Shown one piece after another: positions 1 to 20,077 of a stretch of DNA of 64,000 nt; the first letter of the stretch is position 1; every line of letters starts with the position of its first letter. Position numbers and translations under genes: made by a program. Source of the DNA: Podarcis erhardii (taxonomy: Eukaryota); the NCBI GenBank assembly GCA_964252035.1, contig OZ176204.1; one strand, 5' to 3'. Under the pieces are notes generated by a model. The model was given only the letters and a program-made list of their open reading frames with translations, ran no database searches and was not told the origin of the DNA.

Positions 1-1421
1 AAACCGTTCTTCCCTGGGCAGGAATGCAGCTACCACCTTGCTAGCATGTTGGTTGAGAGAATGCATTGTAGTGTTATGACCCCCCCCCCAAGCTTGGAAC
101 CTTGCAGTGCATGGTAGAGGAAGAGGTTGAGGTCCCTTCCTCCAGGGGTAGGGGAGCAGTGAGAAGAAGAACCATCAGTTTTCCTGGTCAGAGGACACAG
201 CCCTGTCACCATCCTTGGACTCAGCTGATGAGTCCCCTGCTGGATCTCCTCCCAAGTTAGCAGAAGTCAAACACTACAAAATCAAACAAGGCCCTTTAAC
301 AACCCAGACTGCTCCTCCAGGGAGGCACAGCCACATTACAGGCCCTGTCAGCCAATATAAATCTTCACTTGGCTTTCTCCCTGCTAGTATTACCTATATT
401 TTCTCATAGCTACCTTATGTAGGAGAGAGCTTTAGCGGAGCAGGGTTGCTTGGAGCTATCCAAGGTCCTGATTTTCTTCGTCCTCTGCCTTCACCTGACC
501 TTGGGCTTGGCTGGCTTGGCCCATTGCTATTTAAAGATATGATTGAAGTTTGCTGGGACTTTTGTTCTCCCTGCTGCTTTCTGAGTCATCTAGTCCTTCC
601 TCCCTCCCTCCCTTCCTCTTGTGCTAAATTGTAGGAACCCTGCTAGATTGTCTCACATCCTCTATGTAGGAGTTGACTGGGGATCCGGGAAGGTAGTCCA
701 GAAGGAGACTGCAACCTCACTCTGAAGTGTGGATCCCTCCCCCAACCTATTTGGTTTCATCAACATGAATAATGTTGTTTTAAAACAACACAGTACAGCA
801 CAGCATAAGACAAGACAACACGATACGATAATAACTGCATCAGGCTGGTGTTGACATATTATTTGTTCTATAAACTGTTGTCTAGAAGTGTGGTGTGTGA
901 GGGGGAAGACATTTTAGATGTAATTCATTTTTTACTAGAGCCCCAGGTTCTAACAACCAGACTCATGGGCAAAGACACAGAGTTCGAATTAAAGAACAGG
1001 GTGCCTCTGAGCATATTCTGAACCTAGGAAGTTGTTGCCAGTATCAGAAGTGAAATTAGATCACAGCACTTTCACACAAAAATTACCTCCTGGTTAGCTT
1101 TCTACACTTCTGCTGCATAATTTAGGTGGCAAAATTTGTTTTGTTGATGCCATTGTTAAATAACTGGGAGTCAGAGGGTGCAAACACATTTCCACTTGTG
1201 CAACAGGCATTTCCCCTCCTGTCATCCCCTATGCATCCCCCATCATGCCTCCAAAATATGCTCCAGAGGGTTCCCTAAACATCTGGTCCAGAGTCTGAGG
1301 CTGCATGGCAGCTGCAGGTGGGAGAAGAGGAAGGGAAAGTCATGCTGTACTGCCAGAAGACTGTTCTGCTAGTGCCACAGCCATGTTGGATAAAACCCAG
1401 AAATGATTGTGGATCTGAATA

Positions 1422-1935
1422 CCGTATTTTTCGCCCCATAGGGCGCACCGCCCCATAGGACGCACCTAGGGTTTTTTTTGGGGGGGGGGAATAAAGAAAA
1501 AAATATTATTTCCCCCCCAGGCGTGGGGCTGGCGCGGGGGAAACCCGAGCTTCCCCCAATCCCAGCCCCGAGAACAGCCTGCTATCCGCAAGCCTAGGGA
1601 GGCCAGCAGTAAGTCGCGTCGGTCTCCCCAGGCTTCGGAATGCAGGCAGCTCGCCCCAGGACAGCAGGCAGCTCTGTGCAGCCATCGGGAGGCAGGCGCG
1701 ACTTCGCGCCCCGCTCCGGATGGCTGCGCAGAGCTGCGCTCGCCCCGGGACTGCAGGCAGCTCTGCGCAGCCATCGGGAGGCGGGCGTGGCTTTGCGCCC
1801 CGCTCCGGATGGCTGCGCAGAGCTGCGCTCGCCCCGGGACTGCAGGCAGCTCTGCGTTCGCCCCATAGGACGCACACACATTTCCCCTTCATTTTTGGAG
1901 GGGGAAAAGTGCGTACTATAGGGCGAAAAATACGG
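1422..1935. mobile_element. Tc1/mariner (Tc2/Kanga-like) MITE with an internal 89-bp hairpin tandem repeat
   Basis: TA TSD on both sides; TIR CCGTATTTTTCGCCC.ATAG..GCAC; units start at 1652, 1741 and 1830. Confidence 0.85.
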
Positions 1936-3416
1936 TAACTTAAAAATATACTAGTAGATCACGAACTACCATCTGCCTACCTCTGGCCTAGATAACTTGT
2001 ATTATGAGGTGACAGACAAATGCAAATAATAAACAAAAAAACCCCAAAATAAACTCTGATTAACAAATCAAGAGATAGCCTTATCGCAGTGCCTCTTCTT
2101 ACTAAGACAAATTCTTCCTTCCTTCCTTCTTTAACCACAATAAAGCAGTTAATTGACCCCAACATTAACTGCTGTTAAGGTTAACCAGGGTTCTAATTTA
2201 ACTGTGATCTGGAACTGTAGTTAGAAGGGAGAATTTGACCAAAGAAGGAGAGGAGGTATGAGGTGAGGATGTGTATTTCCAAGGCTGACTCTTGATTTGC
2301 CAAGCATGGTTCTCAGAGAGCTAGTACATTGCACTGATCTAGTGGGTGCTATTTGCCACTGCTGCTATAATAATATTTTCAATCTCTGAAAAAATAAACT
2401 GTGCTCAGCTGCAATATATGGTTTGTCATTATGAAGATGGACAAGCAGGAGCCTCTGATTCACATACTCCACCCTCATCCTTACCTCTTCTCCATCAATT
2501 GCATAAGAAAATCGAAAACTTCTGCTTTAGCATTAACCATAGTTCCCTGTTTCATTCACACTCAAGGAACTGTGGTTTGTTTTAACTGGGGTTACTTAAA
2601 ACTAATTAGGCTTAAACTCTTATAAAGAAGGATCATCCTTCTTTTTAGCTAACCACAGTTGTTTGGGATCTTGAGAAAACCACAGCTGGAACAAACTGCA
2701 GTTCCCTACTTTTGATGTAACAGGGGCATCTGATGACTATTGAAGCAGAGGTTTTTGACCTATTCCTCATGTACAAAGTAGAAGGTAAAGTGAATATATG
2801 AGCCCAAGGATCAGAAAGGCTCATTATCGTAACAACGAATTATGGTTTGTCATTTCATTTAACCAATGTCGTGGACTCTCACAAAAACTGCTTATTACAT
2901 CCACCCCACACCGCTAGGCATGAGAGTTATCCATTTGATGAGCGACTTAATAAAAACCTGAAACTTCGAGTTCTTAGATACACCACTGTGGTCTCTAACA
3001 TGTCAAGAAATATATACTTAAGTCAGAGACAGTGGAAGTTGCTGTATCCAGTATCTGCATGGTTCACATCACGGTGATCATGCAAATGAGAACTCCACAA
3101 AATAACACATTAAAACGATTTACAGACATTTTACAGACAGCATCAGGACTGAATTATCATGAGCTAAATTACATAAGCCAAATCACATGAAGAAGGCTCT
3201 ATTTTCCCTTACACAAGTGTAAAGTTTTCTGTACACATATGGAGAGATTGTAATTTTGCACTTTTGGTGTAGCATCCTGCTGTTCCTATGACCTCCAAAA
3301 GTCTCAGTATGATTGTGGCTTTTGGGGGGCAGCCTTTTGGATCCTAGCTATGACAACTGATATAACAACATAGTGCATGCAGAACCTTGACTTTTGATCA
3401 AGGGGCACACAAATAC

Positions 3417-6400
3417 CTTGGATTGCTGTTTCTGGATCCCAGCCTTCAACGTCAATAAGATATCTAAAGGAATATATGCACAGATGCAGATCACCAAGCA
3501 GAACATATCACTCTACTGAAAATAACTGTTTAATATTTTATATGATACTTACCTACAGATAAGATAACCGGTTCTATTAATTCCATTAGTACAGTGTACT
3601 CCTATGAGCTTTGCTATTTAAAAAGCAAAATGAAAATAAAAGAATGTGAATATAAAAATACAGTAAGTGCACAATAAAACAAAGAGGTTTTGCAAAGACT
3701 CTTGCTGTTTACAGAACTGGTCCAGTAGTGCATCTTTAATCCCTTAATGCTGAATGTATTGGCTCCCACTTAGGGAACCACAAATTTAGCAAATGGCTAT
3801 TTGCACTCTGCTTCACTTGCAAAACCTCTTCTAAGATGTGATGAAGACTCTGAAAGCTGACAGTCTTGAGCCAACTTCTCCCTCCTTTTCTGCTTAACTA
3901 GTAATTAGTACTGTTAGGACTGAGATGGCATCTTAGGTAGTCTGCATGCAATATACATGGAGCAGAATTCACCTAAGGACTTCTCCTTCTGCAATGGGCC
4001 TTTCTGCCCACCCCATCACATGAAATTGGCATGGTGGGGGGATCAGGTAAAAAAAGGTAAAGGACCCCTGGATGGTTAAGTCCAGTCAAAGGCGACTATG
4101 GGGTGTGCCGCTCATCTCACTTTTTCAGGCCAAGGGAGCTGGCGTCTGTCCGCAGACAGCTTTCCAGGTCATGTGGCCAGCATGACTAAACCACTACTGG
4201 CACAATGGGACACCGTGACGAGTGCCAGAGCACATGGAAACGTTCGGGGGGGGGGGGATCAGGAGAACTCACAGAACAGCATGCAGGGGAGGAGAGGGAT
4301 GATCATTCCATCCAGCAAGGCAAGCTGCAATGCTTGTGCAGATGGAACATTTGGAGGAGCGTGACATTGAAATCCACCCGAAGAATTGCTTTTGCAGGTC
4401 CAAAACTGAATGCAAGGCTTTCCCTCCAGCTTAATCCACACTATGCAGAAATCTGTTAATGCATGTGGATTGACTTTTCTGGACTGAGACAATGATGTGG
4501 ATGCACATTTTTAATGGGAATTGTTTCTACACAATAGCCGAGATCCAAATAAACACACAACAGCTTTGCATGCACAAAAGGGCTTTGTATTTCTTGAATA
4601 GCAGTCTCATGCTGCGTAGCAAACTTCATTTGAAACTGGGCCAAACTACACAATATGTAGAATGCATGTATTTAGTGTCTCTGACTTTTCTTATTGAAAA
4701 ATACACTGTTAGTAAGGGAGGAAATGGAAATATTGTAACATTCCAGATTTGTTACACTGGAAAACTGTGAATCCGTATTCACAGATTCCAACAGCAATTA
4801 GTAAATTATACATATACGGACAAATAATGTCAGTGTTTTACAAAATGAAAAATGCTGTTAATTACCATTTTCTGCATTTTCCCATAGGAACTTTCTGACC
4901 AATTTTTTGAACCTTAGAATAGTAGGATCATCTGGAACTTCAAATCCAATAGTATAAAGTTTCTGATAGACCACATTTTTAGGCAAATCCTATCAACAAG
5001 AAGGTGAACAAATTGTAGCAAAAAATTGTAATTTAATCATTGCATATCTCTAAGATTGATCCAACTTTTAAAAATTGGCTCTGAATAAAGTTCATTTTGT
5101 AGGAGCTGAAAGTACACAGTTATGTCTGGTGAATCATATTTCAAAACGCTCTTGCATCAGTCATAATTACTGTTGGTACAAATCCCCAAACTCAGAAAGG
5201 GAATGTGATTGCAACAACTCCAAGCACTTTTGTGTCATCTGTCTTCTTTGCACTGCAATTTATTTATTTATTGCACAAGATCTGACAGGAAACCTGCCCC
5301 ATGAGATCATATTTGGAGAAAGCCCTATAGAGTTTTAAACGTATGACATAGTAACGTGGCTAAGTATCCAGTTTCAAAGCTTTGAGCGTCATGGCATCAT
5401 TATAATCATCCGCCAAAACATAGACAGATGTCAGCTGAAAATATAATTAGAGTGCTTCTCTCTGTTTCCAAAATTTTTGGAATTTCATTGTGATAGGCAT
5501 TTCATAATTTGATTAAAATCAATGAACAGAAAGATCCTGGTTTCAAATTGGCAAATCTTACTCTCATAATCCTGTCACTATGTCTCACTACCAGTCTGCG
5601 TCTGATGTAACTCAGTCACACTATAATCCACTAAAGCAAATCAGCCCATTGATTCTAATATACTATTGTAATGAAGCCTAAATGCATTCTTGCTCTTTCT
5701 CCCTACCTCTACTTCTCTTCCCTTGCTCTGCGGTTTTGAATGCCCTCAGGGGCATGGATCTAATCCTGTTACACTAAGCAAAGCACTGTGCACATAGATG
5801 GCAACTATAAATAAATGATTGGCATTCAGAGCTCATCAAGTTCCTCCACTGTTGAATGCTGCATAACACATAGAGAACTGATATGTTTTAAGATCAGCAT
5901 TAGAAAGTACGCAGCAAAACTCGGAAGTACAAATTTACTATTCTTACCTTCACATGATAGTATCTTGTTGTATATGTTAAATCTATAATTAAGCCAAGCT
6001 CTATATTTAGAGCTTTTATTGCAGCTATCAGATCTTTTGGTGTGAACTTTTGAGTTGGTGTCAGTCGCTGGTTGATTTCCTAGGGTGAAGAAAAAAGTAA
6101 TTATATATGAGAAAATGTACCTAGGGAAATGGAAAAATCTGACTCATAAAACGGAGAATTAGGAAATGAAACAGAAGCATTCAAAAGTAACAGGTAGTTT
6201 TGAAGCACAGAAAATTCTTTACCTAAAATTAAACAGGAGGCAGAGGTAATATGAAAATTCAGACAGAAGGTTGTTGAAGGGATTTCTGTCTTGGCTGCTG
6301 TAAGGATAATGCTAATTTAGAGCCCAAATGGAATTGCCCTGAATTGAACATGTGGTATTTTGCAACAACCTGAAAAAGTGAAGTTACTGGAACTTCTGCC

Positions 6401-9400
6401 TGCTTCTTTGGAGAGAAACTGATAAGTAACGTCTAGGTGGAGCAGATCACTGTGGAGTAAACATCTTTTATCTATACAGTTTCACCTTTTGAAGCATCCT
6501 TCACGAAACATCTCTTTGCATCATCTTGAGTAACAATGCTGTTTATCAGATAGTAAATATCAGATAGTTTATCAGATAGTAAACCAAACCTCCCATTCTT
6601 GAGCTTGTAAGCAACTCCACCCAGTACAGACAGGCTAAGAAACAGTACTTCTCAATTGGAAGAAAATTCTCTCCCCTATTCACCTTTCTTTTCTTAAGTT
6701 CAATTTACATATCACTCCCTTCCTTTTCCTCAGCCTTAAGGAGTAAGCAAGACAAAATTCAATCTGTGTAAATTGAGATTCCTGGAAAAGTGTCATGTGA
6801 CCCACTGAAAAATATGGAAATGTGTGATGTAGGTGCACATAGGATACAGGTTTGTCCTTTGTATGTTCTGGATTTCTTTCTTGTAATCTCAGTTAATAAA
6901 ACTCACAGGCGCAACTGAGTGGCAAACAGGGTTTTTGAGACAAAGGGCCAATACACAGAACACAATAGAATACCCTGCCCTACAACCATGACAGTCTTGA
7001 GCCACATACAAAACACAGAGCAGGGATAGGAGGATACTAAAAGAGAATAGTCTTGTAGTTTAAAGACTATTCTGTTGCTCTTGTCTGATATTGTGCTGAA
7101 TGGGATTATCCAAAGGGGGATAAGTTAAACACTTAGATAAAATATACCCGAGTTTATGTGTTATGTTTTGTGATTAACATAAATGTATGAAAGCAAAATT
7201 TTATACGTACCCCTTTCATGGGTGCTTTGAAAGGAATGAACCGGGTTCCTGCTATAGGTTGTCCAATTGGCGATACATTCCGCCATCTGTTAAGAAAAGG
7301 GAAATATGGTTGTATTTAATTCTGTATGCATTGGTAAAATACAGGTTATGACAACAGTGTTTTACAGAAAACATAAGGACTTCAATCCAGAGATATGTAC
7401 AAAAAGCAGAAACTTGCTTTCAGAATACCGCACCAATTATATGTTTTGGTGCAGTTGATAATGGTTCTGAATCCAGATACTCTTTAATGCTGGAAGAAAG
7501 GGAAGGAGGTTCTGGATTCCCTCCCCCTACCCAACATATTGTTGTCTCCGACCAAACTCAGGGTTCAACTGGTAAAAAAGGTAAAGGTAAAGGTACCCCT
7601 GCCCGTACGGGCCAGTCGTGTCCGACTCTAGGGTTGTGTGCTCATCTCACTTAAGAGGCCGGGAGCCAGCGCTGTCCGAAGACACTTCCAGGTCACGTGG
7701 CCAGCCAGCACGTGGCGAGCCAGCACCAGCGCAGCACACGGAAACGCCGTTTACCTTCCCGCTATAAAGCGGTACCTATTTATCTACTTGCACTTGGGGG
7801 TGCTTTCGAACTGCTAGGTGGGCAGGAGCTGGGACCGAACGACGGGAGCTCACCCCGCCGTGGGGATTCGAACCGCCGACCATGCGATCGGCAAGTCCTA
7901 GGCACTGAGGTTTTACCCACAGCGCCACCTGCGTCCACAGTACTTGGTGCTGTACGTTTAATTCTCAGGCCAGTGTTACTGTGCCCCAGAAGCTATGTAG
8001 GCAAGCATTTGTGTACACTTCATTTCCAATCCAACATTGTTAAGAAGGTTGTATTCTCCTTTTCTGTAGCATTGGTCATGCCATTCCAAACAGGTAAGCA
8101 TGTAACGCTTACTGAAATCTCAGAGCATGAGCCTGCCCTATTGATTTTAATGGGAGAGAGCTCAAAATTCTCCTATAGAAATGTGCTCATCTTTGATTAG
8201 GTTTCTAGAAGGGCAGCTGAATTTGTCTGTCAAAGCACAAATAACAAAAGAATCTTGAGGCACTTTAAAGACTAAGAAATTTATGAGGGCATAAGCCTTT
8301 GTGAGCAGGAGTCTGCTTTATCAGATGTATGCTCTCTTCAGCTGCAGGTGGGAAGAGGATTATCAGCAGTGAAATCAGAGAGAAATGAAATTTCAAAATT
8401 TACAAAGGACAATTAAATTAGGGTTAGAATGTCTGCAAAAAAACCAGAGTGAACATTCCCCCAAACCATGACAAATGTTAACATAATCAATACTGATGAT
8501 GAGTTAATTAACATATGTAGTGAGACAGGAAACCATTTTCTCTTACTATTACTGTGAGATGATAATCAAGTTTTTTGTTGCCAAATAGCACATTTTGCTA
8601 TACAGTAGTACTTGTTACTACTATTACTACTACTAATTCCATGGGGCACCTATTACTGCTGCTGCTGCTACTACTACTAAATTATTTAGGACATTTAAAA
8701 AGCACCCAAACCAAACAGAGGTACTCTAGAAAACACTGATATGATTAATGGCATTGAATGCCATTGTGAGATTCAGGAAGGTCAACAAGGCTACACTGTC
8801 CCTATGCATCTCCTGCCATAGGTCCAAATCTGGACTGGAAGCAAGACAAAAACCTGTATCATTTCAAATGTTTCTTTTTGAAAGCAAAGCTAAAATATAC
8901 ATTACTTAATGCAGCAACATATAGAACTAGAAATGAGGTTGGCAGGCTCCAAGTTAGAATGCATCTTTAGCTATTTTTAAAAATGGGAGTCACTGTGATG
9001 TGGCTGTTCCTATGCTATTTCTGGAAGGGTTTGCAGGAAGCAATTGTGAGCTGGTTTAACATGTTTATATCCCAAGCCATCATCTCTGATATATGAGAAA
9101 TAACCATTGCTCCAGCAATGTCTGCAATCACTTCCTAAAAACTTTACGAGGCGCATCCATATTGCAGCAGCTTCTATGTTGTTGCCAGTTACATTAGGGG
9201 GCTGTTGTGTATTGAGCACATACAGTAAGCATAAAAACTCATGGGACTCATAGATTTAATTTTGGCTTTTATTTTGTATTTTATATGAGATACCCTATTA
9301 TGGAACTAGAAAATAGAAATTTTACTTGCAAAAGTAATGGGAAGCCTCTGGCAAAGTGAGAGGTAGGTGAAAAGTATCTCTTGCTACTATGGAAGTCTTT

Positions 9401-12400
9401 GGCTTCCCACGTTGTGCAAACCAGGTTGCTGCATAGGTAGCCTCAAACTATGGCTTACTGGGCTGCTGGATGTGCTCATGATCAAGCTCTTTCCCTGCAA
9501 ACTATGAGCTGCAGCTAAGAATAAACCATGGCTAAGAGCAAACCTTGGCTACAGTCTGTGGTTAGCAAGGAGAGAGCTTAACCACAAGGCCAGATTTGGA
9601 CACGCTAAGCCAAATCTTGGCTCAGCATGCCATATGCATCAAAAGGACAGGGGAAGCACACATACTTCTTTGTGCAAAGTAGGCATCTTTTTACTGTGGA
9701 TATTGTGAGGAATGTTTTTCACATTTGCGGGTGCTAATGCAGGATATGGGGTGGGGATTTGAAAACAGAAGCATGGATAGTGAAGCTATCCTGCAGAAAG
9801 CATTATTGCCTGGACACTTAGCCATGTCACATTCATTGTCTCTTGCACTATTATTGGGGATTCAGCATGCAACTGAACATAAAACTCAGCCAAGAGGCCT
9901 TCTAGTTTGCTTTTAAAAAATCGGGATTCACAACTATGCTCTTCCATCCTTCATAACCTGTCCCTATATGTATATTCTGCTTATTAAACATACATATGAT
10001 GTGTATTGAGCATGGATCAATGTGAAGGTAATTTTGAAAATGTGTATGCAATACATGAATCTTAGAAGAGCAGCATTTCCAGGGACCAGGTTCAGGACTT
10101 CAGTACCCTAAATAATTCATTGACTATCCTCTCATGAGTAATAGTAGAAAAATTACTCAAAATAAAAAAGGACATTTGCATATTTTGCAATATCACAAGA
10201 TTCAGCTGTCCATCTTTTCATAAGCCCAAGGGCATGTGCAGGCATACAAGACCAGTATTTAATCTCCAACTCATTCTTGTTGAACGTGTAAGGCATATTA
10301 GCCTCCAACACCAATTTAAAACTACAAGTGTTTTAGGAATGCGGAGCAAGCAAGAGCAGGCTTAATATAAATTCATGGATGGGGAACCTTAGCCCAAGGG
10401 GCTAAATGCAGCCCTTAAGACCTATTTACCTGGCCCACAGAACTCTCCCCTGGCCACACCTCTTACTGGTCCTGCTTCAAACCTTCCTTAAGTATTTTTG
10501 CCTGGCTGAAATGTTTTTAAACTCTTGATAGTTCTTGGTTGCCTGGATGGACAGAGGTGTGGAAGTGCATAGAAAGGAGTTTACTATACACAATTAAGTT
10601 TCACAATTCCAAGTCCACTTCTGAATCTGACTAAGCTCATTGTTTGCCTCTGGCCCCATCTGTTACAAGCATGCTCCTCAAAGGGAATGGGGACTAGGCT
10701 GAAAAAGGTTCCTCATTACTGCATAAAGCAATGCAACTATAATCTGTGCTACAACACTTAAGGCTTTGACATAAAGATCTTCTCATCCCTTATATACCAA
10801 TGACCATCTTATCATAACTGCTCTGCATTCAGATTGGGGCTTCAATGTGGTGGCGCCTACCCTTTAGAACTCCCTCCTATTACATATCAAACAGGTGCCA
10901 TCTGTACTCTCTTTTCAACAGCTCTTGAAGACTTTCCTTTATAACATTTTTTCTGAGTGGATATTCCTATCCCTAATGTTTTCTGTATGCATTTGAAATT
11001 GTTTTCAGATATCCAATTGTTTTATGCAAGTTTTCAATGTATTCCGAAATCACTTCAAGATGCTTCGAAAGAAGCAATTATAATGGGGGGGGGGATAAAA
11101 TATAGGCCCCCCCATATTCAACACTCAATAGTATTGCTCAATAGTAGCAATGGATAGCACAGCCTGTATTTCTTGCTTTATATACATGCTCCCAAAGTAT
11201 GAACACTTATCGCTATGTCTAACTGTCAATAGTGCATATTTCCTAAGTTGTACTTAGTGGCACTTGCTTCAAAAATAAATTTATTTTGCTTTAAGCATGA
11301 TATGGGTTAGTGTGTTGGACTAGGACCTGGGAGACTAGGGTTCAAATCCCCACCTCAAGCATGCAGCTCACCAAGTGGATCTGATTGGGTCAGTCACTGT
11401 GTCCCAGTCTAACTCATAGGGTCACTTTGAGGATAACATGGGGAGAGAACCATCTAGCCACCTTGAGCTCCTTGAAGGAAAGGTAGGATAAAAATGCAAT
11501 AATGAAATTATTAATAGGCTGAATAGAAGACAGCTTTGTATGTTGTTAGCCAGCTTTCACTACAGCTGACAAAGAAAGCGCCACATTACCTTCCAACAGT
11601 TTGGCAGATTGTTTCCATAGCTTAAAGGTTCTCATCGGTTGCTAGTGGTATGCCAATCCAAACCACAGCTATATTGAAAATGATGCTGTTGATAGCAGAA
11701 GCAGCAATCCATTCAATGTGTATGTATGTGGCTAGAGAGGTTAGGAATATTGGAAGCTGTCTTATTCAAGGTTGGACCATTGGCTCACATAACTCACTAC
11801 TGTCTGCACCGATGGACAGTGGCCCTCCAAGGCTACACTATAACACTTTTGTAGTAGGTACTCATTTGGACTCTTTCAGACACAGGGCTTGGTATCCATA
11901 ACAAAAAAGCAACTCAGTAAAATTTTGTTGTTTTTTTTAAAAAAATTATATACTGCTTAAGCTTTTTTTTTTTTTTAAGGAAAATGGTAAACATTTCCTT
12001 TATTTCAGTAAATGTTTTCTACTGTGTGAGCTTCAGCTTCCATTCTCAAAATGAATTGCCTCAGAGTAGTTTATAAAAAAGTATAGCTGGCAGGTGAAAT
12101 AAACAGACACAGAGGTGGTAGAATTGTTATATTTTATTGTCAGAAATATTGGCTTGTCTGAAATACAAATAAAGTAAGATTGTGGGGCTTTTTTCAGATT
12201 AATTCAAAGATTGTATGGAGTAATTTCAAGGTTTACGTATGTAACCACTTAATGAAGATAAAATAAGCAAGCGTTATCTGCTGCCACATAGCGATGCAAC
12301 ACACTTGTTCATTGACCAAAGTATACTTACCATCTTTGAACACTAAAACTCTTATCGTAGGGACAGGCTTTCATTCTCTGTTTGTATACCTATCCATCTA

Positions 12401-15400
12401 CCCAAACTGGACTGGGATCCAGCAAGCACAACTGAATTCAAACAGCGTGCCAAACCACTGATTACAATTCAAATTTGCAGCTTGAGTTTCCAACAAGGAA
12501 ATGAGTTAATATTTAAATTCTGCTTTAACCAAGCAGTATGATATTTGATAAAAGCAAGACTCAAAGACTTATTGGTTTGTCTTAAGATTCTTTTATCAGT
12601 GAACCTTGCCTCAGAAGTATGCATGCAAGTATCCTATGAAGTCTTTTTTATTACTAAACATGTTTAAAATTTATGAATGTTATTTTTTGTATTCATTTTA
12701 TGGTAGCTGCATTCCAAGAAGGCTTTTTGATATTAACCTGCAGTAAATATATCTGAACCACCTCAAATGGTTGAAGAGGCTGCCAAACATATTTTTAAGA
12801 TACTGGGAGAAGGAGGCAATACTCATGAACCCAAGCTGAAAATGAAACCAATTTTTAAAAACATTTGACTCAATACGTCCTGGGCAAAAACGAGTACGTA
12901 TCTGCCACCTTTTGGCATACTATAGCGGCCACAAATAACATTACTGCTTGAAATTGCTTCCTTGGTAGCAACAGCCTCATGCAGTGAGCCATTTCATATG
13001 TACTGCCTCACCTTGATGGTCAACTCCCACCACATTTTGTCTCCACACCAATGCCAAACATTCCAGCTTCTGTGAACATGGAGATAAATGAAATAGTTGA
13101 GCCTGATCCTCATAGTGAAGTGATGCATACAAAACATCTCACCACATGGAGGCAGTTTCAGATAAACCAAAACCAAAGCCCTCTCCCCCGTTGAAAATCC
13201 TTCATCTGTCATGGACTCTTTACATTCTCCAGGAAAGTGAGGAAGGTCCTTGTCATCCATTATCTTAAAACTGACATGCAGAGCTGAAGTTTTTTGTTTT
13301 AGTTGTTGCTACCTTGCTATACAAGGAAGCATCTGGCAAGAGGAAAAGAGATATCTTCTCAAGTATCATTTCCTGATTAAATACTAGATTGGGCAAACTG
13401 CCAAGATTTACTCTGAATTGAGGATGACCCCTTAAGGCAGGCATGTCCAAAGTTAGGCTAAGGGGCCTAATCCAGCCTGCCATTCTATTTAATTTCCTGG
13501 GGTAAAATCCTAAAAAAAACCAAACACCTCAACAACTTTGGGGTAAACTTCAATTCTAAAAAAAAAGCTCAACAATTTTGATCGGCCCTCACGCATGTTC
13601 ACTTCATCAAATCTGGCCCTCTTTGAAAGAAGTTTGGACACCCCTGCCTTAAGGGGGGAACATAATTGATAGTTTTAAACATGATTTGTCTTGTCTTCTT
13701 GAAGATTTCTGCCTTTCATGCCACTGAGAGCCACACATCAAACTGTTAGAATTATGCTGAACATTAAATAGGTGAAAACCTACTTAATATTCTATTACTC
13801 TAGGATCAATTAGAACAGGAGTGACTAATCTTTTTCACCCTGAGGGCCACACTAGGGGCTGCCACCCCTCCAAGTTCTGCATGCCAGTAGTGGGTGTGCC
13901 CAAAGAACATGTGTACGCTCTCCTACTCAGCTATGCTGGCATACAGTTCACCATAGAGGCAAGCACACATGCAGTAGAGTGGGGTGGAGAGGGACAGCCC
14001 AGCAGAGGAGGAGTGAAGTTTCCAGCATTCTTTCTTTGCACTTTTTCTTTGCACTCTAGTGCTAGGGTAGGAGGCCTTCCTCCTACCTCAATGCTATAAT
14101 GGAGATGAAAAGCCAACAGTTTCAAATGTATTTTTACATTCCAAAGCAGCCTTTTCTCTCTTTTGTGCAATGCCACTGCAAGACAACACAGGAAACAGAA
14201 AGAAACCTTTCTTCCCGTTTCCTGAGCTATAAGGCCTTCTTGCAATTGTATCGCACCAAAGAAGAAGAGGTGCATTTGAAAGCTAAGCTGAGGCAAAGGA
14301 GCCCAATTTTTGGAGAGCTGGTGAGGCACCCTACAGCAATAACACTATGCCACCACAGTGGGAGACTTGCCTCATTGCACTCATGCAGTGAAAACTTTGG
14401 AATGAAATCCATCTCATGCAGACTTAAGTTGCACTCATCACTTCCTCTAACAAAGAGATCAGGTAGTAAGTGATGGCAGAAATGGAACTAATGAGAAAAA
14501 AAGAGAGGGGTACCAGCATGTTCAGTGAAACCCCATAGTTTGCAAAAGTATAAAAAATGTTTTTAAACAAGAATCCCAAGTGGCAAAGCCCTCAATGAGG
14601 CCTGAGAATACTCAGTACATATGGAAAGTTGACTGTCAGATGGAGAAAATCAACAGGGGTGAAGGTGGAATTGAGATTTGTGGAGGATAACAGAGCAGAT
14701 GTAATGGTTGTACACAATTCCTCATCTGAGTTAAAAGCTATTTTTTCATAATAGGAAAAAAACTCAGGACTACTTGCAGTGACCCCAATTAACATCTGAT
14801 TTAATACTTCAAACTGTGTTACAGAAATACACAAAGCGAATAATATTTCAGCTGTCCCTCAAATCATAAGGAATGAAAGGAGAACCACTTAAGCAAATAG
14901 CTCAGAGTAAAGAGCTATCTTATAATGCCCTCCTCAAGACTCTACAATTAAAAAAATTAATAGAAGGAAGGGAAATCTGTCTTTATTCTATTTAGGCAAA
15001 CTGAAATCGATAATATGTCATCACCTGTTAAAATAATGATCATGCAAGCACCTGAAATTATGTAAATAAGTGCTTCATTAATAAAAAAATGATTTTTAAA
15101 TGTTTGCTAGCCTACCTGTCTTATGAATAATTGCAAAGTAACATAACATTTTTCATACAGAAGTATAGTTCCTTCTTACAATAGGAAACAAAGACATTTA
15201 ACTGCACTCACTTTCTATTCCTTATTATTTAGCTGCCTAAAATAACTTAGCTGTTTAAGTTGAATGTATTTTTCCTAATATGAAAGCAGAAAATATTTAC
15301 CAACCTGAATTGCTTAATTATTTTTTATTAGATTGTTAATATACCTGAAGTATATAATGACAACACTTTCCAAGTAATGTGTATCAGCACTTTGGATAAT

Positions 15401-18014
15401 GTATATTTACCTATATTGTTAGCAAATTCATTATAGGTATAAAAATTAACACAAAATAAAATAGAATAACAATGTGCAATTTGAAATAGTCCAGCTATAG
15501 TGTACAATTAAAGGAGGATGTAAAAACTGGAACCTTCAACTTACTGTGAAAGTTATCAGCATTTTTTTCTATAGTAAAATATGCCTTATATGCTGTAGGA
15601 CCGAATCATATTGGTCTATTTCTGCATTATTTCCCTTTAATTAAAATATTTATACACCTTTTTTCATCAATAATTTCAAATCAGTGTACAAAAAATAAAA
15701 ACAAGTAATACAACATACACAGAAAGCAGCAGCAGATAAAAGCACAATTAAGTGATATAATACAGCAATCCTATATAGTACTCTCTTACTGAAGGGCAAG
15801 TTCCACTGAACTTCATTCTCAATAGACATACATATTTAGAATAGAAAAATTCTTTTAAATGCCTGAGTAAATACAAAATGTTTTTGTCCAGTGCCTAAAA
15901 GATAGCAATGGTGGCATCAGGTATACTACCCTGGGGACGCATTCTATAGCCAAGACAAAAGATGTCCTTGCCCTTATTGTAACAAATACAATCTCTGATA
16001 TTTGGTATTTGAAAGAGAGCATCAGTGAAAGACCCTCTGACTTGGGAGGAAACCGATTGATATGCATTTTATGTTTTTGATCTGCTTTATGCATTTACAT
16101 TTGGCTTTGGACCAGAGATAGGACCTTTTCATTGGTGTGCCCCAGATGTGTAACTTCACAATGTTTTTGGCACTGGGAACAGCCATACTTCTCCCTATTT
16201 TAAAATGTTGCTTCTATTCTTACTGATCCTCTTTATTGGTGTTGTTTTTGCTTTTATGTTAATGTTCAATTTTAAATCATTGGAAACTTCCACTGAGAGG
16301 CGAGATGGAAACCTTTTAAAAACTGAAAACCAGAACTGTCTTCTTAGCAAAGGCAGCCCAATGTCCATTCTTTATATAATCCTTTCAACCAATTTATCAC
16401 AGATTTTTTCATATACCCCCTCACCAAGGATCTACTAGCCAAGAGGTATCTGGGCTGCTATAGTCTGTGTGTACTACAACTCTAGTGCTGGTATTTGTAT
16501 GGGTGTACTGTGAAGGCATAGAGAACAGCAACAACATAGAAGAACAAATGAGAGATGGCAGGTTGTGTAATAGCTCCTTAAATGAACAGCTGCTGCCAGT
16601 AAACTCAGCCAGTAATGAATTCCATTCTAGCAGCATATACAAAGATGGCTAATATAACTGTCGACAACACAGACAGCTCAGTGCACAGAGGCTGTAATGT
16701 GCAGCTGCAATTGTATAGTAACTTCAGTACTGAAAACTTATCTGTGCCTAGTTCAGTGCACAATTGTGATAGTCATGCATCACTTCTCATAGTATGTTAC
16801 CAAGCTGGAAGAGGTGAAGTCCTGTTGGTTAGCAGCTACACATTGAAGAAGTTGTGACGATTGGCCTCTAGACAAAAAAATCAAGCTCTACTATGCTACC
16901 AGTTCTAGCCTAAAAGATAATGTACCAATCTTGTAACTACAGTTCACTTTTATTTGCACTATTTTAATTGGTACCTAACTTCCCAATAATTCCTTACAAT
17001 GTTAAGCTTTTGTTCTCAATGCAGAATTCCAGCCAAGTTATCCTTCTATTGAGGGTTGGACTACCAAGTTGATCTGTTTTTTAAAATCAATGCATGTTTC
17101 AACTGTCTGTTAAACGCATACTCAATTTATGTTGGTAATTTAATGCCAGGTTACAAGAGTGTACAAGAGCAGGAGGCAACAGAGGAAGACGCAGAACAAT
17201 TCAAACTAAAAAATATGTCATAACCACAAACTTTGCTTTCGAATTGCTGCAACAGTACTCCTTTAGAAATAATACTGCTTAGCAATATTGTTTCTATGTT
17301 TAATTTTCTAATGTCACTTCCTGAATTACTTCAATTTTATCTTGATATTTGGATAGCTTTATCAAACTAATCTCTACATTTTAAAAGCACTTTTCCATAG
17401 AAAAGTTGTATTATGTTTTAAGAGAGTTCTGGGTTATTTTGGCATGTCACAAAAGTGGAGAAAAATTGGGACCTTAGGGGCTAAATGTGATGAAGGAAAG
17501 TAATTATTGTTTAATAACTGTTAGACAATTATGCAAGTCAATGCTGACAATCCTACTGTTAAAAATAACCACACTTGAATAATACTTTGGTAAAGTTGGG
17601 CTTATGTAAATAGCCCGTGCTTAGTCAAGTAGCATATGTTTCTGCATGTCATGTAATTAATAAAAACAACATGGTGATGTGGTATTATTCTGCCATGTCA
17701 CAGAACTGAAATGTTAAGAACGTAGTTTCCATTAATTCCTCTTTGCACACATTTGAGGATCAAGAGAGAAGAAACAGGAGCCATCTATGGCTGATGGAGG
17801 AGCATTCACAAACACGGTGGGATAAAATACTTACCTGGGGGACGGTAAGCTGTGACTTCATGTTGCTGCAAATACTTACCTTAGCTTATGGTAGATGGCA
17901 AAGACAGTGCTGCAGCAAGAGAGAACAGGTGGGGCTGTCAGAGCCCCCTTCCTCTCTCTCCATGTAATATTTATAGGATACTTACCCAGCGGGAATACTA
18001 TTCTTCTTAACCAT
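3417..18014 (-). CDS. DUSP11/PIR1-like RNA 5'-triphosphatase paralogue (RNA/RNP complex-1-interacting phosphatase-like); 3' end not resolved
   Basis: Six phase-consistent GT-AG exons: 17986-18014, 7211-7286, 5948-6079, 4866-4989, 3553-3613, 3417-3463. Spliced: [156 protein letters not shown]. Matches recalled DUSP11 blocks ([55 protein letters not shown]). Confidence 0.93.
3553..3613 (-). CDS. Catalytic P-loop exon of the DUSP11-like gene
   Basis: ttttaaatag|CAAAGCTC...TGTAG|gtaagt; encodes [19 protein letters not shown], with the HCX5R motif. Confidence 0.93.
4048..4245 (-). mobile_element. 5'-truncated Sauria-type SINE
   Basis: ACCTTT-type tail (AAAGGT on plus), ctcatctc and ggtcatgtggccagcatgac blocks; 12-bp TSD GGGGGGATCAGG at 4036-4047 and 4252-4263. 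Confidence 0.8.
7571..7936 (-). mobile_element. Sauria SINE, full length
   Basis: ACCTTT tail; tRNA-like head with B box GGTTCGAATCC on the minus strand; closely similar to the copy at 56445. Confidence 0.9.
11297..11505 (+). mobile_element. Old tRNA-derived CORE/MIR-like SINE
   Basis: B box GGTTCAAATCCC, MIR-like core (gggtcagtcac...gtgaggataa-like), A-rich tail. Confidence 0.6.
13438..13646. mobile_element. hAT (Buster/Charlie-type) MITE
   Basis: TIR caggcatgtccaa / ttggacacccctg; 8-bp TSD CCTTAAGG. Confidence 0.8.
15855..16190. mobile_element. Two ancient L2-like 3'-end relics in opposite orientation
   Basis: Degenerate RAFSVAAP.LWN.LP...FK..LKT.LF-type coding on minus (15855-16020) and on plus (about 16110-16180). 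Confidence 0.4.
17880..17909 (-). CDS. Candidate 30-nt in-frame cassette micro-exon of the DUSP11-like gene
   Basis: Acceptor ttctctcttgctgcag, donor AAG|gtaagtat, phase 2 to phase 2, stop-free (adds TVFAIYHKLR). No transcript evidence. Confidence 0.35.
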
Positions 18015-18019
18015 GATGA

Positions 18020-19260
18020 AAGCAGGAGTGGACAAGAGCGCGAGGCAGCAGAGAAAATGGGCAGCACTGCAGCAAATGAGAGAGAACCGCGCCGTTAACC
18101 CGGTGCCAGTCTCTTCCTCCAACTCTCACAGAGCTGAGAGCCCTCAAAGGCCTTTGTCGGATGCAATGGTGGTAGCTCACCAGCCATGCATAAAGCAAGG
18201 GAGCAGAAGGTCTAGCTTTTGTTGCCAAAGAGGAGAGCTGAACCCTCACCCCGCACTTATCTCTCCACAGTCCAGCCCCATACCACCACACCAACCTTAC
18301 TTTGAACACAGGAGAGCACAGGAGGGGGGGGGGTCAGACTGCGGGGAGATAAACGGGGGGAGGGTCCCAATAAACCCAGTTTGCTTCCCAAACCAGACCC
18401 TTGCCCCCTCTCTACTGGGGCACTGGGAAAGAAGAGCCTGCTCGACAAACAAACACCCCTCACCGTTTGCTTGGTCTTAAGTGCACGCACCCGAGGAGGT
18501 GGAAATGAGTGCGGGGGGGGGGTTAGAGGAATTAGCAGCTGGTCGGCTAGCGAGGGGGGGGGCAGGTTTCTGCTTCCCCTCCCCCCGAAGCGTGGTGGGG
18601 AGAAAAGGGGGCGCCACAGACTCCATAGGAAGACCCGGCTCCCCGGCGACGGACACCAAGGTTGGGGACCTCGGCGCCGGGCCCAAAACAAGAAGGGCGT
18701 GTAAACTATCTGCGCACCGAAGCCTTGAGGCCCAGAAATCAACCGAGCTGCGGCGTGGCCTTCACCAGGCCTCGCAAGAGGACCGGCGGCGACGGCGGCA
18801 AAAGCGGGTGGGCGGCTGCTCGTACCCTCAGAAACGCGTTTTCCTCTCTCCAGAGAGAAGCGAGCGGACCCAGCGACGGGAAAGGCGTCCTCCTTCACGC
18901 TCCGGCACTGCGCATGCCCAGCGGTCGGTCAGAGCGGCAAGCGCATGCCCAGCGGCGCTCATTAGAGCGCATGCTCTGTTGGCAGCTTCATTTTCTGGCT
19001 GGATGACGAGCGGGGCGGGCGGGAGGGAGGCGGTGCGCGTGCTTGTTTCGCTAACGGTAGAAAGGTTACGGTTATAGCCAGGGCGGGAGAGGACGGTCTC
19101 TCTGCTTCAGAGCGGGTTGCCGTTTCACTTTGCCTCACCCTAAATGGAGCTGGGACTTGGCCGGCTGAGGAGACGGTTCTCTCCCTTCTAGCTCACCTCA
19201 GGAGGAAACGGTCCAGCTAGTCAGGAATGCGGGCGGGGGGGGGGGGGAGAAGGAGTTTCA
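18020..19260. promoter_or_regulatory. CpG island / bidirectional promoter shared by the DUSP11-like gene and CC2D2B
   Basis: Abrupt GC- and CpG-rich stretch in an AT-rich background, between divergent genes. Three GCGCATGC (NRF1-type) motifs at about 18910, 18941 and 18967; GGGCGG GC-boxes near 19016 and 19231. Confidence 0.8.
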
Positions 19261-19360
19261 GTTTTTGAAGAGGTGGGTGCGTGCCTATCAGTGCATTTCT
19301 GTGCTGGGGTCAAAAAAGGGGAAGAATAAGATTTTGTCTTACTGCATTTTTATTTTCTAG

Positions 19361-19508
19361 GATAACTCAGTCAGTAGAGCATGAGACTCTCCATCTTTTT
19401 TGGGGGGGGGTGGGTGTTTGAGCCTCCTGTTGAGTGAGAGATTCCTGCATTGCAGGACTAAGATGGTCCTCGCTGGTCCCTTCCAACTCTACAGTTCTGC
19501 GATTCTAA
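19361..19508 (+). mobile_element. tRNA-Lys(CTT)-derived SINE with a CR1-type tail
   Basis: Head ctcagtcagtagagcatgagactct; tail ggtcccttccaactctacagttct..gattct. Confidence 0.75.
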
Positions 19509-20077
19509 GAACTTAGGACTTTCTGGTTCTAAACCTCTGGACCATGTTTATTGACAATAGCAAAACTCCTATTCTCAGTCAGAACTTGGTGGTATTAATG
19601 CACTTCTCAAATAGGGCTTCTCAAGTTGGGTGCTTATTTCTTAGACTTGCTTGCATTCCATTGTTATCTTGTGGCAGCCACTTGAAACAATATTGCTTTC
19701 ATTGCTTAGTTGCTGTAACAGGCCTGCACAGCTATTTCATAGAACTCACAAGCTGTCAAATGTGGCCTGCCAGGGGATTTGACAGCTGCCACTCAAGTGT
19801 GCTTGGTATATGAGATGTGGTTGACTTGGAATGTTCCAGGTCACACAGAGCTTCTGTAAGCACATCAGCACACGCTTCTTCTGCATTCTATACCTGCACT
19901 CAATGAATGAGCAGTACTGGCACAGAAACATTCTGTACTAGGCAAAAGAATAAGATGAGCTGTGATAGACACAAATATGTGGAATGGAGTAAAGATGGAC
20001 TGGTTTTTACATTTTAATATTCTGCATATTCCTTCCCAGTTTCCTTGATGACCAACTGAATCCAGTTTTTATATAAA

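What the first reader, a model, noticed from the sequence alone, without database searches (positions are those of the whole stretch)
3417..18014. DUSP11-like RNA 5'-phosphatase paralogue with a His-to-Asn change in the P-loop, at a locus where I recall no mammalian counterpart
Seen: an intact spliced DUSP11-type ORF with active-site loop HCTNGINRTG. Established: DUSP11/PIR1, the capping-enzyme (RNGTT) triphosphatase and baculovirus BVP have HCTHG(L/F/I)NRTG; DUSP11 converts 5'-ppp RNA (Pol III and viral RNAs) to 5'-p and dampens RIG-I sensing. Human DUSP11 is on 2p13, while human CC2D2B is flanked by ENTPD1 and CCNJ. Inference: this is a second DUSP11 paralogue, probably retained in sauropsids, that keeps the catalytic Cys and Arg but may have altered specificity (for example stopping at 5'-pp). 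It also lacks the extended N-terminus of human DUSP11. A role on Pol III SINE transcripts is speculation.
Basis: partly seen in the sequence, partly recalled or inferred. Interest (0 to 1): 0.72.

Follow-up and report, generated by a model that had tools for sequence, protein, structure and literature searches.

The report
Lizard copy of unstudied DUSP11 paralogue
The window holds the first six exons of a lizard's copy of an ancient second DUSP11-type RNA-end phosphatase gene (Xenopus dusp11.2), which many vertebrates including dogs and bats also carry; databases list it, but nobody has studied it, and its active site differs consistently from DUSP11.

Summary
Six GT-AG exons on the minus strand (18014 to 3417) splice into 156 codons with the P-loop HCTNGINRTG. 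Spliced transcript contigs from a closely related species confirm all five junctions.

The reading frame is still open at 3417. Exon 7 lies outside the window, and orthologues are about 600-670 aa, so the 156 aa are only the N-terminal quarter.

The gene is not the canonical DUSP11. It belongs to a separate clade (100/100 support) found in sharks, coelacanth, amphibians (Xenopus "dusp11.2"), reptiles, birds and several mammalian orders (carnivores, bats, pangolins, armadillo, colugo). Its best match is Podarcis muralis at 97%.

Synteny is conserved: the gene sits head-to-head with CC2D2B, and in otter ENTPD1 follows it. Anolis sagrei carries both this gene and a STAMBP-linked canonical DUSP11.

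So "second paralogue" is right, while "no mammalian counterpart" and "sauropsid-retained" are wrong.

No clade member has His at the P-loop position (N, T, S or G instead). The clade has also replaced Y38, R192 and N194, and its tetrapod members H119 as well. R192 has been proposed to support beta-phosphate removal.

Cys, Arg and the signature Asn are kept, and dN/dS is 0.07-0.24. The likely reading is an active phosphatase with a remodelled polyphosphate pocket.

The gene is annotated in databases but functionally unstudied.

The parts
17986..18014 (-). Exon 1 (coding part): ATG at 18014, encoding MVKKNSIPA plus 2 nt. The donor GT follows at 17985-17984.
   Evidence: A transcript loose end at 7287 reads into this exon. 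The MVKKN start is conserved from sharks to mammals.
7211..7286 (-). Exon 2 (76 nt), encoding GWRNVSPIGQPIAGTRFIPFKAPMKG.
   Evidence: Junction 6078/7210 appears in 4 runs. Exon length is the same in Anolis, Elgaria and otter.
5948..6079 (-). Exon 3 (132 nt), containing the LGLIIDLTYTTRYY motif.
   Evidence: PDB hit to human DUSP11 at E 4.6e-8. This exon was the query that recovered the family.
4866..4989 (-). Exon 4 (124 nt).
   Evidence: Junctions 4988/5947 and 3613/4866.
3553..3613 (-). Exon 5 (61 nt), the catalytic P-loop exon. HCTNGINRTG is at 3596-3567, the Cys codon at 3593-3591, the Asn replacing canonical His154 at 3587-3585, and the Arg within NRTG.
   Evidence: The P-loop is invariant in 73 fetched paralogue sequences, nearly all amniote.
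3417..3463 (-). Exon 6 (47 nt). It ends in phase 1 and the ORF continues beyond the window. Exons 5 and 6 together are 108 nt, an in-frame cassette.
   Evidence: Annotated isoforms in colugo and a sparrow lack exactly these 36 residues.
3464..3552 (-). Intron 5 (89 nt; 89-107 nt in the relatives examined). It is retained in many transcript contigs. Retention gives a stop five codons after YLICR.
   Evidence: records 3, 9, 16 and 22 span it; sequence; sizes.
18600..19200 (.). CpG island (GC 0.61-0.66, CpG o/e 0.9-1.0) between this gene and the divergently oriented CC2D2B-type gene. It is a probable shared promoter region.
   Evidence: In Anolis sagrei the two annotated genes lie about 200 bp apart head to head. 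CC2D2A-type Pfam hits fall on the + strand at 39424-39711 and 53097-53510.

Best explanation
The window carries the 5' part (exons 1-6, 156 of about 620 codons) of a lacertid lizard's orthologue of the second vertebrate DUSP11-type gene. That gene is called dusp11.2 in Xenopus and 'RNA/RNP complex-1-interacting phosphatase-like' or 'uncharacterized LOC' elsewhere. It arose by duplication of the DUSP11 gene before the jawed-vertebrate radiation. Since then it has stayed head-to-head with CC2D2B and has remained under purifying selection.

The protein has a PIR1-like cysteine-phosphatase core followed by a fast-evolving tail of about 440 aa with no known domain. The catalytic machinery is kept: His-Cys nucleophile, P-loop Arg, Thr, and the family's signature Asn. 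I therefore take it to be an active enzyme that works through a cysteinyl-phosphate intermediate on 5' polyphosphate ends of RNA.

The pocket differs from DUSP11 at residues that never vary in canonical DUSP11: Y38, H119, H154, R192 and N194. R192 is the residue proposed to support beta-phosphate removal, and capping enzymes lack it. My inferred mechanism is a narrowed or shifted activity, most likely removal of the gamma phosphate only (ppp-RNA to pp-RNA) or weak diphosphatase activity, with the tail providing targeting.

Shown here: gene structure, splicing, orthology, synteny, conservation and residue pattern. Inferred: that catalysis is retained (about 0.75) and that product specificity is altered (about 0.4).
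For: Exon model and P-loop. Spliced transcripts.

Family recovery and names: including 'dusp11.2.S' and 'dual specificity phosphatase 11 ..., gene 2'. Best match is Podarcis muralis, 97.4% over 156 aa.

Tree: the paralogue clade has 100/100 support and a 0.78 stem, the window is sister to Podarcis, and amniote branches are much shorter than in canonical DUSP11.

Synteny: otter has CC2D2B, the gene, then ENTPD1. One Anolis sagrei assembly holds both loci. The window itself carries a CC2D2A-type neighbour.

Exon lengths are identical from lizard to otter, and intron positions are shared with canonical DUSP11. dN/dS is 0.07-0.24.

PIR1 core is the closest solved structure by sequence (E 1e-60) and by fold (TM 0.9).

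Fixed differences at Y38, H119, H154, R192 and N194. BVP, which removes both phosphates, keeps both H and ERQNY.

The role of R192 and its absence from capping enzymes come from PMC12058148. That the PIR1 family removes beta and gamma phosphates while capping enzymes remove gamma only comes from the abstract of bioRxiv 10.1101/2020.08.03.235143.
Against: No enzymology exists for any member of this clade, and no paper in the library mentions it.

I could not find the role of His154 in any held paper.

R192, N194 and the tail lie outside the window, so in this genome they are inferred from Podarcis and from 30 nt of a related species' transcript.

Transcript contigs retaining introns 4 and 5 are abundant. 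Isoforms lacking the P-loop cassette are annotated in two species. Part of the gene's output may therefore be non-catalytic.

Capping enzymes stop at pp-RNA yet keep His154, so the H-to-N change alone does not predict that outcome.
Confidence: 0.6

Rival explanations
1. The gene has the same chemistry as DUSP11 (RNA 5' tri- and diphosphatase). The two genes differ only in targeting and expression, through the long tail and the CC2D2B-linked promoter. The pocket substitutions are functionally neutral or merely compensate for one another.
For: Cys, Arg, Thr, the preceding His and the signature Asn are all kept. The core is 54-58% identical to human PIR1 with the same fold. The tail is the most divergent part.
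Against: Several residues that are invariant in 114 canonical sequences are replaced throughout the clade (Y38, H154, R192, N194) or in its tetrapods (H119), and they have stayed replaced for over 400 My. This includes R192, the residue proposed for beta-phosphate removal (PMC12058148).
Confidence: 0.25
2. The protein no longer acts on RNA ends. It is either a phosphatase for another substrate (a protein, or a small polyphosphate) or a binding-only pseudo-enzyme.
For: Residues lining the pocket in DUSP11 are changed. In-frame isoforms without the P-loop are annotated. Caecilian and salamander members also lose the signature Asn (GVSRTG, GLSRTG).
Against: The nucleophile Cys and the Arg are invariant in all 104 full-domain members, and the core is more conserved than that of DUSP11 itself. 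Pseudo-phosphatases usually lose one of these two residues.
Confidence: 0.12
3. In this particular genome the gene is truncated or decaying. Only the first six exons are visible, and lacertids carry unusual substitutions.
For: Exon 7 is not in the window. Lacertids changed four positions of the otherwise invariant GTRFIAFKVPL segment. dN/dS is somewhat higher on comparisons with the window (0.18-0.24).
Against: All six exons are intact with consensus splice sites. A related species splices them correctly and continues in frame into exon 7. Podarcis muralis has a 622-aa model that is 97% identical. Intron 6 is about 4.1 kb in Elgaria, so an exon 7 more than 3.4 kb away is not surprising.
Confidence: 0.04
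4. It is the sole, orthologous DUSP11 of this genome.
For: I could not inspect the rest of this genome. A word search of the scan's notes found no DUSP11 elsewhere.
Against: The clade is separate from canonical DUSP11 with 100/100 support. Anolis sagrei, Eublepharis, Rhineura, Latimeria, Microcaecilia and Ambystoma each have both genes. The canonical gene is STAMBP-linked, whereas this one is CC2D2B-linked.
Confidence: 0.02

Closest known systems
Vertebrate DUSP11 paralogue 2 (Xenopus dusp11.2; NCBI 'RNA/RNP complex-1-interacting phosphatase-like' or 'uncharacterized LOC', e.g. Podarcis muralis LOC114597345; chicken 'DUSP11RC1I')
   Same: The window is 97% identical to the Podarcis protein over the 156 aa it encodes. 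It has the same MVKKN start and the same non-His P-loop. Exon lengths match (29/76/132/124/61/47). The head-to-head CC2D2B neighbour is the same.
   Different: Only the first quarter of the gene is in the window. Lacertids carry their own substitutions in the GTRFIAFKVPL segment (P22A, A28P, V31A, L33M) and L95F.
DUSP11 / PIR1 (canonical RNA 5' tri- and diphosphatase; structures 4JMJ, 4MBB, 4NYH)
   Same: The fold matches (TM 0.9), the core is 54-58% identical, intron positions are shared, and the HC..G.NRTG catalytic residues are kept.
   Different: The locus differs (CC2D2B/ENTPD1 versus STAMBP/KANSL3). There is no N-terminal extension. Y38, H119, H154, R192 and N194 are replaced. The tail is much longer and unrelated in appearance.
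Triphosphatase domain of the metazoan mRNA capping enzyme (RNGTT/Mce1)
   Same: It is a cysteine phosphatase of the same family, and it also lacks an Arg at the R192 position (PMC12058148).
   Different: Sequence identity is only about 35%. There is no guanylyltransferase domain.
Baculovirus phosphatase BVP (1YN9)
   Same: Same fold and P-loop family.
   Different: BVP keeps HCTHG and ERQNY, and this clade has neither.

Membership tests
RNA-specific cysteine phosphatases (PIR1/DUSP11, BVP, capping-enzyme triphosphatase) | Cysteine-phosphatase alpha/beta fold closest to these enzymes | tested here: met
   Tested on the 97%-identical Podarcis orthologue, residues 1-205. phmmer gave E 1e-60 to the PIR1 core and 1e-28 to BVP and capping enzyme. 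The AF2 model has pLDDT 81, and the top Foldseek hits are 4MBB and 4JMJ at TM 0.9.
RNA-specific cysteine phosphatases (PIR1/DUSP11, BVP, capping-enzyme triphosphatase) | P-loop HCxxGxxR(T/S) with the nucleophile Cys and the Arg | tested here: met
   HCTNGINRTG at 3596-3567.
RNA-specific cysteine phosphatases (PIR1/DUSP11, BVP, capping-enzyme triphosphatase) | Signature Asn before the P-loop Arg (HCTHGxNRT). Its role is recalled from the BVP structure paper, which I did not re-read here. | tested here: met
   The loop reads GINRTG in the window and in the 73 sequences with this exact loop. Caecilians and salamanders have Ser there.
RNA-specific cysteine phosphatases (PIR1/DUSP11, BVP, capping-enzyme triphosphatase) | His at the fourth P-loop position (HCTHG) | tested here: not met
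   Asn in the window. None of 104 paralogue sequences has His, against 114 of 114 canonical ones. BVP has HCTHG and the C152S PIR1 crystal chains read HSTHG.
RNA-specific cysteine phosphatases (PIR1/DUSP11, BVP, capping-enzyme triphosphatase) | Hydrolysis of 5' gamma (and beta) phosphates of RNA | not testable with these tools
   This needs enzymology.
Canonical DUSP11 orthologue group | Groups with canonical DUSP11 in a tree | tested here: not met
   It falls in the separate paralogue clade, 100/100 support, stem length 0.78.
Canonical DUSP11 orthologue group | STAMBP-linked locus | tested here: not met
   The window neighbour is of CC2D2A/B type. In Anolis sagrei the canonical gene lies between KANSL3 and STAMBP on another chromosome.
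Canonical DUSP11 orthologue group | Invariant Y38, H154, R192 and N194 (the ERxNY motif) | tested here: not met
   The window has V at the Y38 position and N at the H154 position. R192 and N194 lie outside the window but are G and V/I in orthologues.
Vertebrate DUSP11 paralogue 2 (dusp11.2) | Clusters with the clade; MVKKN start; non-His P-loop | tested here: met
Vertebrate DUSP11 paralogue 2 (dusp11.2) | Head-to-head with CC2D2B; conserved exon lengths | tested here: met
Vertebrate DUSP11 paralogue 2 (dusp11.2) | DGxxY in place of ERxNY, and a tail of about 440 aa | not testable with these tools
   Exon 7 onward is outside the window. These features are present in Podarcis and all other amniote members examined.

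The most novel reading that the evidence does not exclude
DUSP11.2 is a conserved vertebrate RNA-end phosphatase with a rewired polyphosphate pocket (H154N and R192G together with the Y38, H119 and N194 changes). It produces a different 5' end from DUSP11, for example pp-RNA, or acts on a different class of RNA. A conserved in-frame skip of the P-loop cassette (exons 5-6), or detained introns 4 and 5, switches it between catalytic and non-catalytic forms. No primate or rodent copy turned up in the searches, so its role (possibly in handling self or viral triphosphate RNA) has been missed in the usual models.
Probability: 0.2. Interest if true: 0.72.

Novelty: new variant of a known kind. Interest (0 to 1): 0.5.

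Why it matters
DUSP11 sets the 5'-phosphate state of Pol III and viral RNAs, and with it RIG-I sensing and XRN access. All functional work has been done in human, mouse and worm.

This second gene is as old as jawed vertebrates. Its core is more conserved than DUSP11's (about 83% identity between lizard and dog), and it lacks the residue proposed to support beta-phosphate removal. I found no primate or rodent copy, which would explain why there is no literature on it.

If it makes a different RNA 5' end, then birds, reptiles, amphibians, dogs and bats have a layer of 5'-end control that the standard models lack.

The window itself adds nothing beyond one more orthologue, and the gene is already annotated in public databases.

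Tried and rejected
1. I considered a candidate seventh exon at about 2511-2475, which has good splice sites and encodes EVFDFLMQLMEKR. I rejected it because transcripts continue from 3417 into a different sequence (AFGEARGHHI) that is absent from the window.

2. The 156-aa spliced protein has no reference, so I did not type it into any search tool. I used exon 3 by reference for the one large search and compared the spliced protein with the hits in scripts.

3. Paper searches for 'DUSP11-like' and 'dusp11.2' gave 0 hits. 'HCTHG' gave nothing useful.

4. The PIR1 structure paper and the Mce1 structure paper are not held. The structural role of His154 therefore could not be checked.

5. The look-up of encoding contigs had no record for the gecko, guineafowl and Xenopus tropicalis proteins.

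6. Rfam, a tRNA scan and a repeat search of 1-20000 found nothing connected with the gene.

7. Pfam finds no domain in the tail.

Full report
**Observation.** A six-frame scan finds one HCT.G.NR motif in the window, on the minus strand at 3596-3573. Reading the minus strand gives six exons with AG/GT borders: 18014-17986, 7286-7211, 6079-5948, 4989-4866, 3613-3553 and 3463-3417. The Asn codon AAT is at 3587-3585. The ATG at 18014 is the first in-frame ATG after a stop 37 codons upstream.

**The ORF is not complete.** It is open in phase 1 at 3417. No frame of the remaining 3.4 kb encodes the expected next segment.

**Transcript evidence.** No run of the same organism is recorded as RNA. Four runs from three studies of a species 95-99% identical contain spliced contigs.
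- They show the joints 3463/3553, 3613/4866, 4988/5947 and 6078/7210. All have CT..AC ends on the + strand, which is GT..AG on the minus strand.
- A loose end at 7287 is the reverse complement of exon 1 including its ATG.
- A loose end at 3417 reads, on the minus strand, in frame as AFGEARGHHI. That 30-mer is absent from the window, so exon 7 lies beyond the window start.
- The same data show contigs that retain the 89-nt intron 5, which would give a stop five codons after YLICR.
- Contigs also cover intron 4 at depths close to those of the exons, whereas introns 2 and 3 have none. Contig depths are crude, so I record this only as a notable pattern.

**What it is.** The spliced protein has no reference, so I searched with exon 3 by reference against 1.84 billion representatives. 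That gave 75 hits. Compared in a script with the spliced protein, they split cleanly.
- Proteins 62-97% identical never have His at the fourth P-loop position.
- Proteins 45-59% identical all read HCTHG.
- Source names identify the first group as 'RNA/RNP complex-1-interacting phosphatase-like' or 'uncharacterized LOC'. Xenopus calls it 'dusp11.2.S' or 'dual specificity phosphatase 11 ..., gene 2', and chicken 'DUSP11RC1I'.
- The best match is Podarcis muralis LOC114597345 (622 aa), 97.4% identical over all 156 residues. The window therefore comes from a lacertid lizard.

**Taxonomic spread.** Members come from chimaera, shark, rays, coelacanth, caecilians, salamanders, frogs, tuatara, squamates, turtles, crocodilians and birds. 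Among mammals they come from dog, jackal, fox, otter, panda, seal, several bats, pangolins, armadillo and colugo, plus a 108-aa elephant fragment. A search with the otter tail found no primate, rodent or ungulate member. That is absence from a word-based search, not proof of loss. No ray-finned fish appeared in the clade.

**Phylogeny and gene structure.** A careful ML tree of 52 core domains gives the paralogue clade 100/100 support on a stem of 0.78. It sits inside a vertebrate DUSP11 group (99/94) rooted on five outgroup sequences (a nemertean protein and four unnamed ones from public assemblies). The window is sister to Podarcis (99/88). Amniote branches in this clade are 0.01-0.1, against 0.1-0.4 in canonical DUSP11. 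Exon lengths of 29/76/132/124/61/47 are identical in the window, Anolis sagrei, Elgaria and otter. Intron positions coincide with those of canonical DUSP11 in Anolis, so this was a DNA-level duplication and not a retrocopy. Pairwise dN/dS over the 156 codons is 0.07-0.24.

**Synteny.**
- In otter the order is CC2D2B (minus), this gene (plus), ENTPD1 (minus).
- In Anolis sagrei the gene lies about 200 bp head-to-head with the CC2D2B-type gene. The same assembly has canonical DUSP11 between KANSL3 and STAMBP on another chromosome.
- In sawfish the gene is followed by BTAF1.
- In the window the + strand carries CC2D2AN-C2 and CEP76-peptidase-like Pfam hits at 39424-39711 and 53097-53510. A CpG island at 18600-19200 lies between the two genes.
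- From my own knowledge, human 2p13 (DUSP11, TLX2/LBX2) and 10q24 (CC2D2B, TLX1/LBX1) are paralogous regions from the early vertebrate genome duplications. This fits the tree but was not tested here.

**Active site.** The core of the Podarcis orthologue matches the PIR1 core at E 1e-60, and BVP and capping enzymes at 1e-28. An AF2 model (pLDDT 81) superposes on 4MBB and 4JMJ at TM 0.9.

Compared across 104 paralogue and 114 canonical domains, the catalytic His-Cys, Arg and Thr are invariant in both groups. The Asn before the Arg is kept in the window and in nearly all fetched amniote sequences. In human numbering, the canonical residues and their replacements in the N-type (mostly amniote) clade members are:

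| Canonical residue | Replacement in the clade |
|---|---|
| Y38 (114/114) | V, L or I |
| H119 (110/114) | L (F in lacertids; still His in cartilaginous fishes) |
| H154 (114/114) | N (T in frogs and salamanders, S in shark and chimaera, G in rays) |
| N183 | G |
| E191 | D |
| R192 (114/114) | G |
| N194 (114/114) | V or I |

The window encodes the first three of these. The position of N183 is seen as G in the related species' transcript. R192 and N194 lie in the missing exon. BVP, which like PIR1 removes both gamma and beta phosphates, keeps HCTHG and ERQNY. R192 has been proposed to support beta-phosphate removal and is lacking in capping enzymes, according to PMC12058148 citing the PIR1 structure paper. 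I could not obtain any statement on His154.

**Mechanism.** Conservation of the nucleophile, the Arg and the signature Asn for over 400 My, at low dN/dS, argues for an active enzyme. The coordinated loss of basic and polar residues that are invariant in DUSP11 argues that the polyphosphate pocket works differently. The most economical prediction is reduced or absent diphosphatase activity, giving pp-RNA as product. I put catalysis retained at about 0.75 and altered product specificity at about 0.4.

The tail of about 440 aa has no Pfam domain. It is rich in charged and aromatic residues in loosely repeated R-x-F/P-H-D-like units. It is only about 30-35% identical between mammals and sauropsids, so I take it to be a disordered targeting region.

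Exons 5 and 6 together are 108 nt. Annotated isoforms in colugo and a sparrow lack exactly these 36 residues. A P-loop-less in-frame isoform may therefore be a conserved feature.

**Verdict.** The paralogue idea is right.

The gene is annotated in public databases, but neither 'DUSP11-like' nor 'dusp11.2' occurs in any paper of the library, and none of the DUSP11 papers I checked mentions it. The clade-wide active-site pattern, especially R192G, is the part worth a specialist's attention.

Noticed in passing
window 3464-3552 and 3614-4865: In four runs of a related species, contigs retain the 89-nt intron 5 and cover intron 4 at depths near exon level, while introns 2 and 3 have zero depth. 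Both retained introns flank the P-loop exon, and each would give an early stop. They may be detained introns.
   Followed up: partly
window 3417-3613 (exons 5+6); proteins P0262, P0247: Exons 5 and 6 sum to 108 nt. Annotated isoforms in colugo and a seaside sparrow lack exactly these 36 residues, which include the whole P-loop, and stay in frame.
   Followed up: partly
window 7211-7286 and 4866-4989: Lacertids (the window and Podarcis) changed positions that are otherwise invariant in both DUSP11 paralogues: P22A, A28P, V31A and L33M in the GTRFIAFKVPL segment, and L95F. K88Q and Q105R are specific to the window. Q105R is a three-base codon change relative to the related species.
   Followed up: partly
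window 3947-4300 (intron 4): This is a dispersed repeat. Transcript contig depth there is in the thousands to tens of thousands, with hundreds of contigs and many different flanks. There is no second copy in the window.
   Followed up: partly
window 7571-7936 and 56442-56818: An interspersed repeat of about 370 nt. The two copies are 89% identical, one in intron 1 of this gene and one in the CC2D2B-type gene.
   Followed up: partly
window 1649-1826: Two tandem 89-nt GC-rich units (92% identical) that also form a 70-nt inverted repeat. They sit inside a GC-rich repeat block at about 1440-1960 in intron 6.
   Followed up: no
window 29654-34538: A Gypsy-type LTR element with one uninterrupted 1359-aa gag-pol ORF (30114-34193, + strand), inside the span of the CC2D2B-type gene.
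   Followed up: no
protein P0245 (Sceloporus undulatus): In this member the P-loop reads NCTYGINRTG, so the His before the Cys is lost. The start is MGRKNH and there are many other changes. It may be a relaxed or duplicated copy in that lizard.
   Followed up: no
proteins P0007 (elephant, 108 aa) and P0006 (unnamed transcript assembly, 143 aa): These are truncated or frameshifted versions of the paralogue. They suggest decay of the gene in some mammalian lineages.
   Followed up: no
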